Virus record (IMG/VR): IMGVR_UViG_3300005964_000010 | Coordinates: 1 to 17,323 of that record | Reading direction: 5' to 3' (one strand) | Length of the DNA stretch: 17,323 nt | Part shown: one piece after another, positions 1,924 through 15,860 of the stretch | How positions within the stretch are numbered: the stretch's first letter is position 1 | Layout of the letters: each line of letters begins with the position of its first letter | The notes under the pieces: generated by a model | Told to the model about the DNA's origin: nothing | The model's input: only the letters and a program-made list of their open reading frames with translations | Databases searched by the model: none | Program-made: the position numbers and the translations under genes

Positions 1924-1950
1924 ATTCATAATATTATGAATATAGTATGT
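1924..1950. promoter_or_regulatory. Palindromic operator ATTCATAATATTATGAAT plus ATAGTATGT tail, copy 1
   Basis: Perfect 18-bp palindrome at 1924-1941, just upstream of the minus-strand TATA-like TTTTTAAG of the 545-aa gene. Recurs at 9236 and 12660. Confidence 0.65.
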
Positions 1951-5672: not shown

Positions 5673-5988
5673 CTTGCCCCAAATTATATATTATGACAGT
5701 TTTATATTTTTTATAATGAACTAGTACTAACGGTTTACAAGTACAAAAATTGAACATTTCACAGAACTTAAATAATTTATCAATTTGAAAATTGTCTACA
5801 ATGACGAAATCTTGTGAAGTTGATTTCACTTCAATTGGAAAAATTGTATTATCCTTAGTCGCTAGAATATCTGGAATTGGCTGTTTTCCAGTACCAGAAA
5901 CTGGAATTCTTATAGCTTTATAACCGTTTTTTTCTAGATAATTAAGTGTCTTATATTCATAATATTTTCCAGATTGTCTAAAGTTCAT
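5605..5988 (-). CDS. hjc: Holliday junction resolvase (archaeal Hjc family)
   Basis: Motifs G-K-Y-Y-E, GYKAIRIPVSGTG, PDILA and IEVKST (PD-(D/E)xK). ATG at 5988 preferred over TTG at 5991. Confidence 0.95.
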   Translation of the reverse strand: MNFRQSGKYYEYKTLNYLEKNGYKAIRIPVSGTGKQPIPDILATKDNTIFPIEVKSTSQDFVIVDNFQIDKLFKFCEMFNFCTCKPLVLVHYKKYKTVIIYNLGQDDRGKEKIKFKFRNNGQTLFSS

Positions 5989-7097: not shown

Positions 7098-8570
7098 ATG
7101 TATGACATATATATACATAATGGATCTAGTGAGTTTTTCTTTTCAGAATTCACATTCTTTATGAGAAATATGGGTAGGAAAGTAGGAAATAGGTCAATCG
7201 CATCAATGAAATATCATTTATATCAAAAAGTGCTAAATAGAAAGTCATTTCCCGCATTTTCCATTATGTTTGATGCAGGCGTTTCTTCAGTTTTGCCAAC
7301 TGCATTACAAAATGTTCAAGTTCCTCCAGGTATAAATACAAATTATGGAATTGCATATGCCTCAATAATCTCTTCTTTGCTCTTAGCTCTGAATAATTTA
7401 GCAATTTCAAAGTTTAATCCAAATACAAATGTGCAAAATTTTCTACAATTAGGTCAAAGTCCAATTTTTGGACAAACATCAGGAATTCAATTTATACAAC
7501 AAAGTAGTAAACTATATGATAAATATGTTCAACTTTGTTCAATTTTGTATCAGCCTGCAGTTTTTGATGAAACATATTTCGACTTATCAGTTTTTCAGCC
7601 TTCTAATACAATTATTAATAGAAATGAGGCATGCGGAAAAATAGAAAAATATTTCTCTCAAGTAACAACTACAAATATCTCTATAGATCTTCCGACTCTA
7701 GGAATTGGAAATACTAGTATTCCCGTTTCAGATAATTTTAGTATTCAAAATATTCAAAATACTGGAATCTCGGATTTGTTAAATGCTTTAAATATAAACT
7801 ATAATCAACTTCCTGATTTGGCTAAATTCTTAGTTTCATTTATTCCAAATTTGAATGATATAATTAATAGCGGATTCGCACTTGATGTTGGATGGTTAGA
7901 TAGATGTGTTTTAGCACCGGAGATTGAAAGTTCTCCAACTTATAAGGTACAATTACAAAATGGAATGATTTTGCAAAATTTTGCTGATGTTTTTGGAATG
8001 ATATTGGATTATACACCACTAGACCTAGCTATATTAATTCCTGAATTTAATCCACAAAATGTTACACAATTAGATTTAGTTTCTATTTTATCCGCTGATA
8101 AAACAATAATCTCAATTTTTGGAAGTTTATTTAAATTACATTTATATGATCCGTCACCTGGCGGAGTAAATATAACTTATAGCTCAGAGATTGAAAATTA
8201 TGCAGTTACTTACCAACAATTCTTACATATCCAACAATTAGTAAATAAGAAATATTCTAACGTTTGGTATGCTAAAATGGTCGCAAGTGCAATTTTGGAA
8301 ATTGCTAGATATCCGTATCAACAAAACTATAGTTATTCGACAGGAAAAAGAACGCTTTCATATTCTGATTTCTTGAATTATTGGAAAAATAAGTGGACAT
8401 TTTACGGCCTATCAAGTGCAGATTTACAATTTGCTCAAGAATATGGTGAGAAAATACAGGGACAGGCAAAGGTAGAAAATTCGCTTAAGTTAGCACAAAA
8501 ATCAGCAAAAGCTAAACAATATAAGCCAATTTTCTACTACAAAAACTTTAATAATATAGCAAATAGATAA
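7098..8570 (+). CDS. Minor virion structural protein (SIRV2 ORF488-like); true start probably 7161 or 7170
   Basis: MGRKVGNRSIASMKYHLYQKVLNRK and QPAVFDETYFDLSVF motifs. ATG 7098 falls inside the minus-strand GNAT promoter, so a later start is likely. Confidence 0.85.
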   Translation: MYDIYIHNGSSEFFFSEFTFFMRNMGRKVGNRSIASMKYHLYQKVLNRKSFPAFSIMFDAGVSSVLPTALQNVQVPPGINTNYGIAYASIISSLLLALNNLAISKFNPNTNVQNFLQLGQSPIFGQTSGIQFIQQSSKLYDKYVQLCSILYQPAVFDETYFDLSVFQPSNTIINRNEACGKIEKYFSQVTTTNISIDLPTLGIGNTSIPVSDNFSIQNIQNTGISDLLNALNINYNQLPDLAKFLVSFIPNLNDIINSGFALDVGWLDRCVLAPEIESSPTYKVQLQNGMILQNFADVFGMILDYTPLDLAILIPEFNPQNVTQLDLVSILSADKTIISIFGSLFKLHLYDPSPGGVNITYSSEIENYAVTYQQFLHIQQLVNKKYSNVWYAKMVASAILEIARYPYQQNYSYSTGKRTLSYSDFLNYWKNKWTFYGLSSADLQFAQEYGEKIQGQAKVENSLKLAQKSAKAKQYKPIFYYKNFNNIANR

Positions 8571-8583
8571 GAAGTTGATAGTT

Positions 8584-8769
8584 ATGATAGTTAAAAAGAG
8601 AAAAGAATGGAATAGAGATCCAAATACATGGAACGGGAAATTATATAATCCTTATAAAAACCCATGGAATAGAAAAATTTATATGCCTTATAAAAATACA
8701 TGGAATGGGAAATTTTATATTCCTTGTAAAATTGATAAGAAGAAAATTGAAGAAATATTAAAAAGTTGA
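8584..8769 (+). CDS. Small basic protein with three 12-aa repeats (NxWNxKxYxPYK)
   Basis: ATG at 8584 (or TTG 8575). The repeat unit is in frame, and W, N, K, Y, P and K are conserved across units. Confidence 0.65.
   Translation: MIVKKRKEWNRDPNTWNGKLYNPYKNPWNRKIYMPYKNTWNGKFYIPCKIDKKKIEEILKS
8623..8730 (+). repeat. 3 x 36-bp tandem repeat
   Basis: Units at 8623-8658, 8659-8694 and 8695-8730. Unit 1 vs 3 is 32/36 identical; unit 1 vs 2 is 27/36. Confidence 0.9.
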
Positions 8770-8819: not shown

Positions 8820-9158
8820 TTAACATAAAGTTACATATGGTAATAAAGTTATTGTATTACCTATACGTCCAATATAATATCTTTGTTCACATGAGCCAAG
8901 ATATTCATCTCTAAATGTTTTACCTTCAACCAACAATTTTAATTGTTTTAACGCTTTTTCTTTTAATGTTTTTGGTTTCTTTTCATGCCTTTTTTGTTCC
9001 CATGCTATTTCTAACTCATACGAAACATCATTATCTGGATCATTATGACTTAGTTCATAGTGAAGATCTAACTCTTCTTGATCTGTAGTTATGAAAGCAC
9101 ATAATTTACAAAAATACAACTTGTTTTGACTTTTAATTTGTCTACTTTGACTTCTCAT
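8820..9158 (-). CDS. C2H2 zinc-finger protein
   Basis: 112 aa, YFCKLCAFITTDQEELDLHYELSH. Minus-strand TTTATATA about 33 bp upstream. Confidence 0.75.
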   Translation of the reverse strand: MRSQSRQIKSQNKLYFCKLCAFITTDQEELDLHYELSHNDPDNDVSYELEIAWEQKRHEKKPKTLKEKALKQLKLLVEGKTFRDEYLGSCEQRYYIGRIGNTITLLPYVTLC

Positions 9159-9235: not shown

Positions 9236-9264
9236 ATATTCATAATATTATGAATATAGCATGT
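9236..9264. promoter_or_regulatory. Palindromic operator ATATTCATAATATTATGAATAT plus AGCATGT tail, copy 2
   Basis: Perfect 22-bp palindrome at 9236-9257, upstream of the TTTTTATC box of the 122-aa ORF. Confidence 0.65.
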
Positions 9265-10595: not shown

Positions 10596-10645
10596 GATCT
10601 CACAATATTTTTATATATTATGACATACATATATTTTTCGATTTA

Positions 10646-12659: not shown

Positions 12660-12688
12660 ACATGCTATATTCATAATATTATGTATAT
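12660..12688. promoter_or_regulatory. Palindromic operator copy 3 (inverted), midway between MCP and the divergent 99-aa ORF
   Basis: ACATGCT-ATATTCATAATATTATGTATAT is the reverse complement of copy 2 with one mismatch. Confidence 0.65.
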
Positions 12689-12794: not shown

Positions 12795-13094
12795 ATGGAT
12801 GAGATTGTTAAATACGAATGTATAAAATATACAACTCAGCTATTTGAATGGTTAAAAATACGTTACCCTAACAATCTTTATGATTATTTAGTTTTGGAAG
12901 ATAAGAATTTAGTAACTATCAAAATTATAATGAATGTTTCAATAAAATTTTACGAAAAAAAGGGAATCGGAATTCTGAGATATATACTAAAGACTTTCCG
13001 ATATCCACAATTTATATCCATAAATTGGAGATATAACAGAAATATGTTTAATATTGTAGTTTTTTGTGGTAAACCAAAATCTGAAACTTCTTAA
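12795..13094 (+). CDS. Conserved-looking rudiviral hypothetical protein
   Basis: 99 aa. TATTTAAT box about 25 bp upstream; divergent from MCP. Confidence 0.7.
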   Translation: MDEIVKYECIKYTTQLFEWLKIRYPNNLYDYLVLEDKNLVTIKIIMNVSIKFYEKKGIGILRYILKTFRYPQFISINWRYNRNMFNIVVFCGKPKSETS

Positions 13095-13150
13095 TTAGAA
13101 ATTAAGGATGAGGAAAACTTTTTTAAGTGTTTAATAACAAATATTCATAC

Positions 13151-13297
13151 ATGAGAATTGAAGAAAAAGACGGTGAAGGTTACTTAGTGATTGAAAGTAA
13201 AGAAGATTTAGAAGAATTTAGAAAAATGTTAATTGAGGCTTATTATGAGCTAAATCCTGACCACAAACGTTCTTATGAAACTCAATCTTCTAAATGA
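13151..13297 (+). CDS. 48-aa acidic hypothetical protein (not in ORF track)
   Basis: MRIEEKDGEGYLVIESKEDLEEFRKMLIEAYYELNPDHKRSYETQSSK*. Purine-rich BRE-like GGAAAA plus TTTTTTAAG about 25-30 bp upstream. Confidence 0.7.
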   Translation: MRIEEKDGEGYLVIESKEDLEEFRKMLIEAYYELNPDHKRSYETQSSK

Positions 13298-13310
13298 CTT
13301 AAAACACATG

Positions 13311-13330
13311 CTTATAAATTTGTCAGATAA
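13311..13330 (+). repeat. 20-bp direct repeat, left copy (TATA+GTC promoter)
   Basis: CTTATAAATTTGTCAGATAA, identical to 14295-14314. Confidence 0.85.
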
Positions 13331-13374
13331 CTTAAAAGTTTTAAGAACATAATGTCTAAGGGGGATATTGATTT

Positions 13375-14301
13375 ATGAAAATTATATTTGGAGATTCTAG
13401 AAATATGAAAGAAGTTGAAAATAACAGTATAGGTTTAGTTCTTACTTCTCCGCCTTATTATAATGCACCATATGATTTTCCGGACCTTTTTCCTTCTTAT
13501 AACGATTACTTGAATATGATAAATGAAGTAGGCAAGGAAATTTTCAGAGTTTTAGAAGACGGCAGAATTTCAGTTTTCGTTATAGGAGATGTTAGAATTG
13601 ACGGTGAACTTTATCCTATAACTGCAGATTTAATAAAAATAATGCTAAACTTAGGTTTTAAATATCAAGAAAGAATCATTTGGAAAAAACCAGAAATTTA
13701 TATCAAAATTAGTAGAAGAAGTGGGGTCCTTATTCAACATCCTTATCCTCTTTATTATTATCCGGATAATATTTATGAAGAAATTGTAGTTTTTAAGAAA
13801 CCAGGAAAATTTATTCCTAGGAATAAGGAAGAAAGTAAAATAGATATAAATAAATTTCAAAGAGAAAAATGGTATTTGAGCATGTGGGAAATAACTAATG
13901 TATTACCTCAAGATAAATATTCAAAATATACAGCACCATTTCCAGAAGAGCTAGCTAGAAGAATTATTACACTTTATTCTTATGTAGGTGATACGGTTCT
14001 AGATCCTTTTTCTGGATCTGGTACTACATTAAAGGTCGCTAATGAATTAAAAAGAAATGCTATAGGTTATGAAATTGATTTAGAACTAAAAGATATAATC
14101 TTAGAAAGAATTGGAATTAATACGCTTTTCGGAAAAACACAGATAGAGATAATTGAAAGAGAAGATGCTAAAAAATTAAGGTCCATATTAAGTGAAAAAA
14201 TTGAGGAAAAAATACAGATGAAGAAGTCGAAAAAACAGAAAGATCCAGAAACGGAGAAAAATCAATCATCATTACAAGATTGGTCCATTAGTAACTTATA
14301 A
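13375..14301 (+). CDS. Orphan beta-class N4-cytosine/N6-adenine DNA methyltransferase
   Basis: N-terminal GDS..TSPPY (motif IV), IIWKK, APFPEELARRII, and C-terminal VLDPFSGSGTT (motif I) and IGYEI. SPPY suggests m4C. Confidence 0.92.
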   Translation: MKIIFGDSRNMKEVENNSIGLVLTSPPYYNAPYDFPDLFPSYNDYLNMINEVGKEIFRVLEDGRISVFVIGDVRIDGELYPITADLIKIMLNLGFKYQERIIWKKPEIYIKISRRSGVLIQHPYPLYYYPDNIYEEIVVFKKPGKFIPRNKEESKIDINKFQREKWYLSMWEITNVLPQDKYSKYTAPFPEELARRIITLYSYVGDTVLDPFSGSGTTLKVANELKRNAIGYEIDLELKDIILERIGINTLFGKTQIEIIEREDAKKLRSILSEKIEEKIQMKKSKKQKDPETEKNQSSLQDWSISNL

Positions 14302-14314
14302 ATTTGTCAGATAA
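14295..14314 (+). repeat. 20-bp direct repeat, right copy (TATA+GTC promoter), overlapping MTase stop codon
   Basis: CTTATAAATTTGTCAGATAA, identical to 13311-13330. Confidence 0.85.
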
Positions 14315-14336
14315 AGAAAAATAAAAATGACAAAAT

Positions 14337-14612
14337 ATGGATAGAGATTTTTGGAGAATATTAGTCTTCTTAGTTTTTCTATTTTTTACGTTTTTAGCTT
14401 TGATAATTTTATCATTAGGAATTCTAACAAAAAATATGTTAGAAATTATAATAATAGTAATTTTTGCATCTGGAATTTTTGCATTTTTATATACTGTAAT
14501 TTATGATACTTTTGCTGATATTTATGATGAAATTGATGAACTTAAACTAGAAATTGAAAGATTGAAAAGAGAGAGAAGACAAGATATATATATGTCAGAA
14601 AATGAAAAGTAA
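14337..14612 (+). CDS. Small membrane protein (2 TM helices plus C-terminal coiled coil)
   Basis: 91 aa. Two hydrophobic stretches, then IYDEIDELKLEIERLKRE. Confidence 0.75.
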   Translation: MDRDFWRILVFLVFLFFTFLALIILSLGILTKNMLEIIIIVIFASGIFAFLYTVIYDTFADIYDEIDELKLEIERLKRERRQDIYMSENEK

Positions 14613-14614
14613 AG

Positions 14615-14785
14615 ATGAGACGGAAAAACATGACTTTTAAAACCGAATGTGATAAAAGTACAATTAGATGCAATGGTGAAGATTGCTATATATTATGTTA
14701 TGGTCACTGGGTAAAATTCATTCCAACATATCCCCCTGTCAATGATGTTATATTACTTGATGAAGGGTTAGATTTACGTGGCTAA
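14615..14785 (+). CDS. Small Cys-rich protein (56 aa, or 51 aa from ATG 14630; not in ORF track)
   Basis: MRRKNMTFKTECDKSTIRCNGEDCYILCYGHWVKFIPTYPPVNDVILLDEGLDLRG*. Own promoter GATATATATATGTCAGA at 14583-14599. Confidence 0.6.
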   Translation: MRRKNMTFKTECDKSTIRCNGEDCYILCYGHWVKFIPTYPPVNDVILLDEGLDLRG

Positions 14786-14948
14786 GAAAAACAAAATACG
14801 GTTTACTGAAAGAAAATTTAAAATAATAATGTTTTTTTATACTACATTAGATATTTTTCTACTCACACTTATATTTTTAACAATAATTCATGCTTTAAAA
14901 TAACTAGAAATATATACGTCATATTTTAAGTCGAAAAAAAGATCAAAC

Positions 14949-15473
14949 ATGATTTTAAGCGATAGAGATCTAAAGTATTATCTTGAAAAAGGCCTAATTT
15001 TTATTAGACCTTTTTCAGGTGAAATTATAAGAGAAAACGGAATAGATTTAAGAATTGGCCCACAATTTGCCAGATTAACAAAAACTGATAAAGTTTTTGA
15101 AACTGGTAAAAATGTTGAAGATTTCTATACTGTCACAAATTCTAATCATTTTATAGTTTTTCCACATGAACATGTATTAATGACAACTATGGAATATATA
15201 GAATTACCAAATGATGTAATGGCATTTGTAAATTTACGTTCAACTTTCGCAAGACTTGGCCTATTTATTCCACCGACAATTGTAGATGCAGGATTTAGAG
15301 GACAATTAACTATAGAAATTGTAGGCTCAGAATTTCCAATAAAACTTGAAACTGGACAAAGATTTCTACATTTAATTTTTGCCAAGACACTAACGCCAGT
15401 TGAAAATCCATATCATGGCAAATATCAATACCAAAATAATGTAACATTGCCAAAATTTGAAAATAAAGTTTAA
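14949..15473 (+). CDS. dUTPase / dCTP deaminase family protein
   Basis: 174 aa with [34 protein letters not shown] and YHGKYQ. Rudiviruses encode a dUTPase of this family. Confidence 0.92.
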
Positions 15474-15815: not shown

Positions 15816-15840
15816 TTTTCCTCATTCATCAAATGCATAT

Positions 15841-15860
15841 TATGACATATTTATATATTT
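15841..15860 (-). promoter_or_regulatory. TATA+GTC promoter of svtR-like gene
   Basis: AAATATATAAATATGTCATA on the minus strand; exact inverted copy at 16956-16975. Confidence 0.7.

What the first reader, a model, noticed from the sequence alone, without database searches (positions are those of the whole stretch)
13311..14314. DNA methyltransferase on a 984-bp cassette bounded by exact 20-bp direct repeats of a promoter
Seen: CTTATAAATTTGTCAGATAA occurs at 13311-13330 and 14295-14314, and the right copy supplies the MTase stop codon. Recombination between the copies would remove exactly the MTase unit and leave one intact promoter for the next gene. No transposase or cognate endonuclease is nearby. 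Neighbouring accessory genes (14337, 14615, 14949) each start with a related promoter. Known: repeated early promoters bound shufflable gene cassettes in T4-like phages; a beta-class MTase is not among the SIRV core genes I know. Inference: a promoter-bounded gene capture/excision array in an archaeal virus, here carrying anti-restriction cargo.
Basis: partly seen in the sequence, partly recalled or inferred. Interest (0 to 1): 0.72.

Follow-up and report, generated by a model that had tools for sequence, protein, structure and literature searches.

The report
Promoter-flanked orphan methyltransferase cassette in rudivirus
A rod-shaped archaeal virus carries a DNA methyltransferase gene, copied from a host-type restriction-modification system, sitting between two copies of its neighbour's promoter; relatives lack it and have one promoter, which suggests accessory genes here are shuffled at repeated promoters.

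Summary
The exact 20-mer occurs only at 13311-13330 and 14295-14314. It brackets a 308-aa PF01555 DNA methyltransferase (MTase) whose stop codon lies in the right copy.

The 20-mer is a canonical rudiviral promoter (TATA box plus the GTC element). It is the best-preserved core of a duplication of about 33 nt (13305-13337 = 14289-14321) around 951 nt of unique DNA.

The window is a whole 17.3-kb contig of a Yellowstone-type usarudivirus.
- **Empty sites exist.** SIRV8/9 and at least six metagenomic relatives have one promoter and no MTase. One empty allele is 98.8% identical in the left flank to an occupied one.
- **The insertion is old and kept.** It appears in more than 10 assemblies and in diverged alleles (dS about 0.3, dN/dS about 0.15).
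- **A second site exists.** Another rudivirus lineage carries a related MTase elsewhere in the same array, between 26-nt exact copies of a different promoter.
- **Hybrid promoters exist.** Two contigs show a neighbouring cassette deleted by promoter-to-promoter joining.
- **The MTase is an orphan.** An 86%-identical Stygiolobus gene sits next to a type II endonuclease, which the virus lacks.

Best reading: an anti-restriction gene in an accessory array remodelled by recombination at promoter repeats, like T4 PeSLs. Active excision is not shown.

The parts
13127..13297 (+). Small left-neighbour gene of 48-56 aa (GTG at 13127 or ATG at 13151). It is the homologue of SIRV9 ORF22.
   Evidence: The same gene precedes the single promoter in the empty-site alleles.
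13305..13337 (+). Left copy of the duplicated core promoter. The exact 20-mer is 13311-13330, the TATA-like box is 13312-13319 and the GTC element is 13322-13324. This copy drives the MTase.
   Evidence: Left-flank homology to the empty alleles ends at 13337.
13331..13345 (+). Palindrome CTTAAAAGTTTTAAG (7-nt arms) straddling the end of the duplication and the start of the insert. It may be an operator or a 5' RNA hairpin.
   Evidence: It is kept in the diverged occupied alleles, and a similar palindrome sits at the same place in L007. Its function is unknown.
13338..14288 (+). Unique inserted DNA of 951 nt: a 37-nt leader with a Shine-Dalgarno-like GGGGGAT (13360-13366), plus nearly all of the MTase ORF.
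   Evidence: a gap between the two HSPs in every empty allele. There are no terminal inverted repeats.
13375..14301 (+). Orphan beta-class type II DNA methyltransferase of 308 aa. SPPY is at residues 25-28 and DPFSGSGTT at 210-218. It is probably an N4-cytosine enzyme.
   Evidence: PF01555, 2.7e-47; PADLOC MTase_II, 5e-90; PDB 2zie, 1e-28; dN/dS 0.15; motif positions.
14289..14321 (+). Right copy of the duplicated core promoter. The exact 20-mer is 14295-14314, the TATA-like box is 14296-14303 and the GTC element is 14306-14308. It supplies the last codons and the stop of the MTase and drives the 91-aa gene.
14337..14612 (+). 91-aa membrane and coiled-coil protein, the native owner of the duplicated promoter. 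Its 3' end contains the next promoter.
14584..14614 (+). Promoter of the next cassette (TATA + GTC at 14594-14596). In contigs L066 and L086 it is joined in register to the upstream promoter.
14615..14785 (+). 56-aa cysteine-rich accessory gene, forming the next cassette.
14905..15473 (+). Promoter (GTC at 14918-14920) and the dCTP deaminase/dUTPase gene (14949-15473). This is the right-hand anchor of the variable array.
12795..13094 (+). 99-aa gene, the left-hand anchor of the variable array.

Best explanation
The window is part of a Yellowstone-type usarudivirus genome. Between the 99-aa gene and the dCTP deaminase gene lies an array of single-gene accessory units. Each unit is fronted by a member of one promoter family (BRE/TATA plus the rudiviral GTC element).

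One unit is an orphan beta-class type II DNA methyltransferase. It sits in 951 nt of unique DNA inserted just downstream of the core promoter of a small membrane-protein gene. About 33 nt of that promoter are present on both sides. The left copy transcribes the MTase through a 37-nt leader with a ribosome-binding site. The right copy still transcribes the original gene.

The enzyme most likely methylates the viral genome. That would protect it from a host type II restriction enzyme of the kind paired with its closest cellular relative.

The array changes by recombination between these promoter repeats, within or between co-infecting genomes. This is the same logic as the PeSL promoter cassettes of T4-like phages. 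As a result the cassette is present in some members of the virus population and absent in others.

**Shown:** the anatomy, the empty alleles, the second site, the hybrid promoter, orphan status and purifying selection.
**Inferred:** promoter activity, methylation and protection, and homology-driven recombination as the cause.
For: - **Repeat and ORF:**
- **Virus identity:** SIRV4-11 match at 80-82% nt. The window also carries the capsid protein, a glycosyltransferase and Hjc.
- **Promoter nature:** TATA + GTC(A) lies upstream of 14 of the window's ORFs. The GTC element is documented for SIRV1/2 (PMC5569661).
- **Empty sites:** SIRV9 and L012-L017, L069, L081 and L084 have one promoter between the same neighbours. 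The blast HSPs end at 13337 and restart at 14289, and they overlap by 33 nt in the empty loci.
- **Polymorphism in one population:** occupied L040 and empty L015 are 98.8% identical in the left flank.
- **Real and inherited:** the same arrangement occurs in at least 10 independent assemblies and in diverged alleles L039, L040, L061 and L088. dN/dS is 0.15-0.16.
- **Second site:** in L007, L050, L051 and L087 a related MTase (85% nt) lies between 25-29-nt copies of another promoter. That promoter is native to the downstream 72-aa gene in the empty alleles L046 and L047.
- **One rudiviral clade:** the rudiviral MTases group together with SH-aLRT 87.
- **Promoter-to-promoter joining:** L066 and L086 have a hybrid promoter whose 5' part comes from the duplicated promoter and whose 3' part comes from the 14615 gene's promoter. 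The 91-aa unit is removed in register.
- **Local repeats are promoters:** most exact direct repeats of 15 nt or more in these loci, and all those of 23 nt or more, are promoter cores. This includes 27-28-nt identical promoters before tandem paralogues.
- **Anti-restriction role:** the 86%-identical Stygiolobus gene is followed directly by a type II REase (PADLOC, 1e-133). The viruses have no homologue of it.
- **Precedents:** PeSLs in T4-like phages (PMC2839356), and direct-repeat excision in SSV1 (PMC6080066).
Against: - No near-isogenic empty site of the window's own lineage was found in JGI metagenomes. No circle or tandem junction was sought or seen.
- The cassette has persisted through dS of about 0.3, so loss through the repeats is either rare or selected against.
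- Presence/absence could spread by ordinary homologous recombination in the conserved flanking genes, without using the repeats at all.
- The original right junction (MTase 3' end joined to the 5' edge of the promoter) has no visible homology. At least one illegitimate event was therefore needed.
- Selection alone would favour products that leave each gene with a promoter.
- The methylation target is unknown. No 4-mer palindrome shows a telling bias.
- Transcription from either copy has not been measured.
Confidence: 0.6

Rival explanations
1. One-off illegitimate (non-homologous or microhomology) insertion of a foreign MTase fragment. The promoter duplication is a by-product kept by selection because both genes need a promoter. 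On this view the repeats are passive and the array is not shuffled through them. Presence or absence spreads by homologous recombination in the flanking genes.
For: - The junctions of the unique DNA show no homology to any known donor.
- The duplicated 33 nt is just the core promoter, from BRE to about the transcription start. That is what selection would require.
- The cassette is stable over dS of about 0.3.
- No isogenic empty site was found.
- The downstream neighbour differs between occupied alleles, which fits flank recombination.
Against: - Two separate MTase sites each carry a duplication of the local promoter ending at the same promoter position.
- The in-register hybrid promoter in L066 and L086 shows that promoter copies do recombine.
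- Promoter cores dominate the local exact repeats.
Confidence: 0.28
2. Gene replacement. The ancestor already had two tandem paralogues of the membrane-protein gene, each with its own promoter, as in SIRV8/9. The MTase replaced the coding part of the first paralogue, so the flanking promoters pre-existed.
For: SIRV9, L018, L019, L021, L022 and L025 have two tandem paralogues, and in SIRV9, L018 and L025 their promoters share an exact 27-28-nt stretch 276-288 nt apart.
Against: - The right copy carries the 5' part (TAGAAAC + CTTAT) that is specific to the first promoter, not to the second paralogue's promoter.
- The closest empty alleles (L013, L015, L016; about 91-95% nt) have a single promoter and a single paralogue.
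Confidence: 0.08
3. A transposable element (IS or MITE-like) or integron-type cassette that made a target-site duplication.
For: There is a direct repeat at both ends and an exact empty site.
Against: - There are no terminal inverted repeats.
- The insert is filled by the MTase ORF, leaving no room for a transposase.
- No transposase or integrase was found in the window.
- A 33-nt duplication is atypical.
- The repeat differs in length and sequence at the second site.
Confidence: 0.02
4. Assembly artefact: a chimeric contig joined at a repeated promoter.
For: Short repeats can mis-join metagenomic contigs.
Against: The same arrangement was recovered in at least 10 contigs from different JGI and ENA samples and assemblers. 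It also appears in alleles about 9% diverged with the same junctions.
Confidence: 0.01

Closest known systems
PeSL (promoter-early stem-loop) regulatory cassettes of T4-like phages (Arbiol et al. 2010, PMC2839356; Comeau et al. 2014, PMC4122927)
   Same: - Repeated promoter motifs bound single accessory genes in a hyperplastic region.
- Close relatives differ by one gene, with a single motif at the empty site.
- Recombination between the motifs would delete, insert or move a gene together with its promoter.
   Different: - This is an archaeal TATA/BRE + GTC promoter of about 25-35 nt, not a sigma-70 promoter plus terminator stem-loop spread over about 100 bp.
- It occurs in a linear hairpin-ended rudivirus that uses host or viral archaeal recombination functions.
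- Mini-circles have not been shown.
Orphan DNA methyltransferases of phages and archaeal viruses used against restriction (for example those of Sulfolobales virus YNP1/YNP2 and STSV1/2)
   Same: - Same PF01555 family: 87.5% aa identity to YNP1 and 59% to STSV1/2.
- No cognate endonuclease is present.
- The closest cellular copy belongs to a type II R-M pair.
   Different: - This is the first example I could find of this MTase in Rudiviridae. It is absent from all rudivirus records searched.
- Specificity and activity are untested.
Conserved early/anti-defence regulatory sequences of archaeal viruses (Nat Commun 2024, PMC11065993)
   Same: A near-identical promoter-containing motif precedes many small accessory genes within one rudiviral genome.
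   Different: - That work uses the motif to predict anti-defence genes near the genome termini and does not discuss recombination.
- The SIRV9 proteins tested here were not in its tables.
- Whether the motifs are the same was not established.
Direct-repeat-mediated excision in the fusellovirus SSV1 (cited in PMC6080066)
   Same: Short direct repeats in a Sulfolobales virus lead to precise loss of the DNA between them.
   Different: Those repeats lie in coding regions (the VP1/VP3 C-termini), and the excision was seen experimentally. Here the repeats are promoters and loss is only inferred.

Membership tests
Beta-class N4/N6 DNA methyltransferase (PF01555), type II | Significant full-length match to the family profile | tested here: met
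   PF01555 at 2.7e-47 over residues 21-243. PADLOC MTase_II at 5e-90. PDB 2zie at 1e-28.
Beta-class N4/N6 DNA methyltransferase (PF01555), type II | Beta motif order: catalytic (S/D)PP(Y/F) lies N-terminal to the SAM-binding FxGxG | tested here: met
   SPPY is at residues 25-28 and DPFSGSGTT at 210-218. Reading serine rather than aspartate as a sign of N4-cytosine specificity is an inference from general knowledge.
Beta-class N4/N6 DNA methyltransferase (PF01555), type II | Methyl transfer to a defined DNA sequence | not testable with these tools
   No methylome is available. Palindromic 4-mer frequencies are uninformative.
Complete type II restriction-modification system | Cognate endonuclease gene next to the MTase | tested here: not met
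   The Stygiolobus homologue has an adjacent REase_II (1e-133). tblastn with that REase finds nothing in the window or in the other viral loci. The viral gene is therefore an orphan.
PeSL-like promoter cassette array | The same promoter motif is repeated at the boundaries of accessory genes in a variable region | tested here: met
   Exact promoter repeats are 20 nt (window), 26 nt (L007) and 27-28 nt (SIRV9, L025).
PeSL-like promoter cassette array | Close relatives differ by a gene, with a single motif at the empty site and breakpoints inside the motifs | tested here: met
   The MTase indel shows a 33-nt overlap. The hybrid promoter in L066 and L086 shows a 24-34-nt overlap.
PeSL-like promoter cassette array | A terminator stem-loop is part of the repeated motif | tested here: inconclusive
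   A palindrome with 7-nt arms follows the left promoter copy only in the MTase leaders. It is not part of the repeat and is absent from the other promoters.
PeSL-like promoter cassette array | Excised mini-circles carrying one chimeric motif | not testable with these tools
   This needs outward-facing PCR or long reads. The assemblies cannot show it.
Transposable element / insertion sequence | Terminal inverted repeats and a transposase, or dependence on one | tested here: not met
   No inverted repeat joins the insert ends. No transposase or integrase domain was found in the window.
Rudiviridae (Usarudivirus-like) | Hallmark genes and nucleotide similarity to SIRV genomes | tested here: met
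   80-82% nt identity to SIRV4-11. The window has the capsid protein PF12193, glycosyltransferase, dCTP deaminase and RHH regulators, and the Hjc resolvase. Gene order matches SIRV9 and SIRV6.

The most novel reading that the evidence does not exclude
Rudiviral core promoters (TATA + GTC) may double as portable recombination sites. Any promoter-fronted gene could then be excised, duplicated or inserted at another promoter, possibly through small circles or template switching in the virus's recombination-rich replication. That would give archaeal viruses an integrase-free gene-capture platform through which defence and counter-defence genes such as this methyltransferase circulate. The palindrome formed at the promoter/insert junction in both MTase sites might be part of that process, or an operator.
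Probability: 0.3. Interest if true: 0.7.

Novelty: new variant of a known kind. Interest (0 to 1): 0.5.

Why it matters
Accessory genes are thought to drive the arms race between Sulfolobales viruses and their hosts. How they are gained and lost has not been worked out for rudiviruses.

This locus gives a concrete, testable case. It has a defined cassette and defined repeats. Natural occupied, empty and hybrid alleles exist, along with a second insertion site and a cargo whose likely target, a type II R-M system of Stygiolobus type, is identifiable.

The locus also shows restriction evasion by methylation in a family so far known mainly for anti-CRISPR genes. It further suggests that promoter-guided modular shuffling, described for T4-like phages, arose independently in an archaeal virus with a different promoter type.

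Tried and rejected
- **Near-isogenic empty site.** An exact pattern with the window's own left flank joined to the downstream leader found no match in JGI metagenome contigs.
- **Exact 20-mer in IMG/VR.** It occurs only in the window's own contig.
- **Recognition-site inference.** Palindromic 4-mer bias gave no useful signal. CGCG and GCGC are absent but rarely expected, and CTAG, GATC and GGCC are not depleted.
- **NCBIfam.** Only sub-threshold hits to adenine methylase equivalogs, so no specificity call.
- **Transposon reading.** Rejected: no inverted ends and no transposase.
- **C-terminal tail as read-through artefact.** I considered that the MTase's tail was created by reading into the promoter, and rejected it. 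The lysine-rich ...L-x-x-W tail is native to the family. Only about the last four codons come from the duplicated DNA.
- **Concerted evolution of the two copies.** Comparing L007 with L087, only one co-varying position was found, which is too weak to use.
- **Kessler et al. 2004.** The paper could not be read. The GTC element is cited through PMC5569661 instead.
- **PMC11065993 supplement.** It does not list the SIRV9 neighbours or the YNP1 MTase as predicted anti-defence genes.

Full report
**1. The observation**

The 20-mer CTTATAAATTTGTCAGATAA occurs at 13311-13330 and 14295-14314 and nowhere else in the window, even with three mismatches allowed. Shuffles give 0.04 matches. Base composition predicts about 0.005 exact 20-mer pairs. 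It is the only exact direct repeat of 15 nt or more within 2.5 kb in the whole window.

Between the copies lies one ORF, 13375-14301 (308 aa). It matches PF01555 N6_N4_Mtase at 2.7e-47, and its TAA stop (14299-14301) is inside the right copy.

**2. What the window is**

The window is a complete 17,323-bp metagenomic contig, IMGVR_UViG_3300005964_000010. It is 80-82% identical in DNA to the Yellowstone Sulfolobus islandicus rod-shaped viruses SIRV4-11. Its gene order matches SIRV9 and SIRV6. It carries rudiviral hallmark genes: the capsid protein, a glycosyltransferase, dCTP deaminase/dUTPase, RHH regulators and the Hjc resolvase. It is an unpublished relative of the usarudiviruses.

**3. What the repeat is**

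Upstream regions of the window's genes show a TATA-like box followed a few bases later by (T)GTCA, 20-35 nt before the start codon, for 14 ORFs on both strands. A GTC element downstream of the TATA box is the documented virus-specific promoter element of SIRV1/2 (Kessler et al. 2004, as cited in PMC5569661; see also PMC1635249).

The 20-mer is therefore a standard rudiviral core promoter, with TATA at 13312-13319 and GTC at 13322-13324. The specific 20-mer is not a genome-wide consensus. Only about 10 nt are shared with the other promoters.

**4. Empty sites and the true extent of the duplication**

In SIRV9 the homologue of the left neighbour (ORF22) is followed by a single copy of the promoter with one mismatch. 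That promoter runs straight into the homologue of the right neighbour.

The same single-copy arrangement is found in L012-L017, in L069 and L081, and in L084, which comes from the same metagenome as the window.

Against the closest empty alleles (L013, L015, L016; 91-95% nt in the flanks), the left alignment ends at 13337 and the right one starts at 14289. The two alignments overlap by 33 nt in the empty locus. The duplicated target is therefore about 33 nt (13305-13337 = 14289-14321) and the unique insert is 13338-14288, 951 nt.

Sister occupied alleles confirm this. In L039 the two copies share 23 exact bases and 30 of 33 overall. In L038, whose MTase is identical to the window's, the right copy differs from the left at position 18. 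The exact 20-mer is the conserved core of a longer, slightly decayed duplication.

The 33 nt span the BRE/TATA box to roughly the expected transcription start. That is the minimal promoter (inference from archaeal promoter geometry).

**5. The cassette is real, inherited and selected**

The identical MTase in the same context occurs on at least 10 contigs from different JGI and ENA samples. Alleles about 9% diverged (L039, L040, L061, L088) keep the same junctions, leader and palindrome.

Between these alleles dS is about 0.31-0.33 and dN/dS is 0.15-0.16. The gene's G+C (28.6%) equals the virus's (28%), against 35-36% in its relatives from YNP1 and Stygiolobus.

The lysine-rich tail ending in L-x-x-W is native to the protein family. 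Only the last four or so codons come from the duplicated promoter. This is not a recent or decaying insertion.

**6. Polymorphism**

In the left flank, occupied L040 and empty L015 are 98.8% identical, while each is about 95% identical to the window. Presence and absence therefore segregate within one closely related population.

The downstream neighbour also differs between occupied alleles. It is the MDRDF-type paralogue in the window and the MGKL-type paralogue in L039 and L040.

A pattern for an empty site with the window's own left flank found nothing in JGI metagenomes. Recent excision from this particular lineage is therefore not documented.

**7. A second site**

Contig L007 (11.5 kb), together with L050, L051 and L087, belongs to another rudivirus lineage. 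It carries a related MTase (85% nt, 83% aa) in the same variable region but between different genes.

That MTase lies between 26-nt exact copies of a different promoter, TAAATATATTTGTCATAAAGTTAAAA. In L087 the copies match over about 29 nt with one mismatch. In the empty alleles L046 and L047, that promoter is the native promoter of the downstream 72-aa gene.

In both lineages the duplicated part ends at the same promoter position (...AAAA). The MTase-specific leader then begins with N-TTTT(T)AA, which forms a palindrome across the junction.

The rudiviral MTases form one clade among about 60 close homologues, with moderate support (SH-aLRT 87). The simplest history is one entry into rudiviruses followed by relocation within the array.

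**8. Promoter-to-promoter recombination elsewhere in the array**

L066 and L086 join the left neighbour's promoter directly to the gene that sits at 14615 in the window. Their promoter is a hybrid. The 5' part, through TTTGTCAGAAAAC, is the duplicated promoter. The 3' part, up to the ATG, is the 14615 gene's promoter. A 24-34-nt stretch is alignable to both. The 91-aa unit has therefore been removed, or never inserted, exactly in register between two promoter-family members.

In SIRV9, L018 and L025 two tandem paralogues are preceded by 27-28-nt identical promoters. L007 has four promoters sharing 15-26 nt.

Several unrelated upstream proteins end in the same peptide...INLSENEK, because they read into the next gene's promoter. 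In these loci most local exact repeats of 15 nt or more, and all those of 23 nt or more, are promoter cores.

**9. Function of the cargo**

The protein has the beta-class motif order, with SPPY at 25-28 and DPFSGSGTT at 210-218. It matches type II methyltransferase models. Serine in the catalytic motif points to N4-cytosine methylation, which is an inference from general knowledge.

It is absent from all published rudiviruses. Its closest viral relatives are Sulfolobales viruses YNP1 (87.5% aa) and YNP2, then STSV1/2.

In the chromosome of Stygiolobus sp. CP850M, an 86%-identical gene is followed immediately by a 372-aa ORF. That ORF matches a type II restriction enzyme model over its full length at 1e-133. 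No homologue of that enzyme is present in the window or in the other viral loci.

The viral gene is thus an orphan copy of the M half of a host-type R-M system. Self-protection from restriction is the obvious role. The target sequence could not be inferred.

**10. Mechanism and rivals**

The best-supported reading is a promoter-fronted cassette array remodelled by recombination between promoter repeats. This is analogous to the PeSL cassettes of T4-like phages, where an ORF flanked by two PeSLs in one phage corresponds to a single PeSL in its relative (PMC2839356). Short direct repeats are known to cause precise excision in another Sulfolobales virus (PMC6080066).

The main rival is illegitimate insertion, with the promoter duplication kept by selection and the presence/absence state spread by recombination in the flanking genes. 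This rival cannot be excluded for the original MTase capture. That event needed at least one non-homologous junction, at the MTase 3' end.

Gene replacement of a tandem paralogue is unlikely, because the right copy carries the 5' part specific to the first promoter. A transposon and an assembly artefact are both rejected.

**11. Novelty**

Orphan viral methyltransferases and promoter-mediated shuffling are both known. I found no report of either for Rudiviridae. The Yellowstone SIRV papers describe variable genes and recombination but no promoter repeats and no DNA methyltransferase of this family. The 2024 study of conserved regulatory sequences in archaeal viruses does not discuss recombination.

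I rate this a new variant of a known kind. It is of moderate interest and has a clear experimental path.

Noticed in passing
window 1924-1941, 9238-9255, 12669-12686: An 18-bp perfect palindrome, ATTCATAATATTATGAAT, occurs three times (two exact, one with 1 mismatch; 0.01 expected). Each copy lies about 50-110 nt upstream of a gene start, including the divergent region next to the capsid gene. It is probably a transcription-factor operator.
   Followed up: partly
window 8622-8731: About three tandem copies of a 36-nt unit (82% matches) lie in an apparently non-coding stretch between the 490-aa gene (ends at 8570) and the 112-aa gene (8820-9158). Their function is unknown.
   Followed up: no
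window 14590-14612; L001 3340-3372; L003 3001-3027: Unrelated upstream proteins end in the same peptide (I/Y-N/M-L-S-E-N-E-K-stop), because their ORFs run into the next gene's promoter (ATAAATTTGTCAGAAAACGAAAAATAA).
   Followed up: partly
window 13331-13345; L007 about 1855-1868: A palindrome sits exactly at the promoter/insert junction of both MTase cassettes: CTTAAAAGTTTTAAG here and TTAAAAATTTTTAA in L007. It is kept in the diverged alleles. It could be an operator, a 5' hairpin, or a trace of the joining event.
   Followed up: partly
L052 4001-5977 (Stygiolobus sp. CP850M, NZ_JBBHKR010000052): A chromosomal type II R-M pair. The MTase is 86% identical to the viral one, and an adjacent 372-aa endonuclease is recognised only by a PADLOC model (no Pfam, NCBIfam or PDB hit).
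   Followed up: partly
L042 655-2777 and L041 4001-4906: In non-rudiviral metagenome contigs the related MTase (82-84% aa) is followed, with overlapping stop and start, by a second 407-aa protein with a methyltransferase domain.
   Followed up: no
window, whole: CGCG and GCGC are absent from all 17.3 kb (4-7 expected), and CCGG is at half its expectation. CTAG, GATC and GGCC are not depleted.
   Followed up: no
window 5684-5711, 10611-10638, 15833-15860: A second promoter subfamily on the minus strand (TGTCATAATATATAA type) is repeated before three leftward genes several kb apart.
   Followed up: no
L001 3058-3084 and 3346-3372 (SIRV9); L025 3686 and 3962: Tandem paralogues of the small membrane/coiled-coil protein are each preceded by a 27-28-nt identical promoter, 276-288 nt apart. 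This looks like a promoter-plus-gene tandem duplication.
   Followed up: partly
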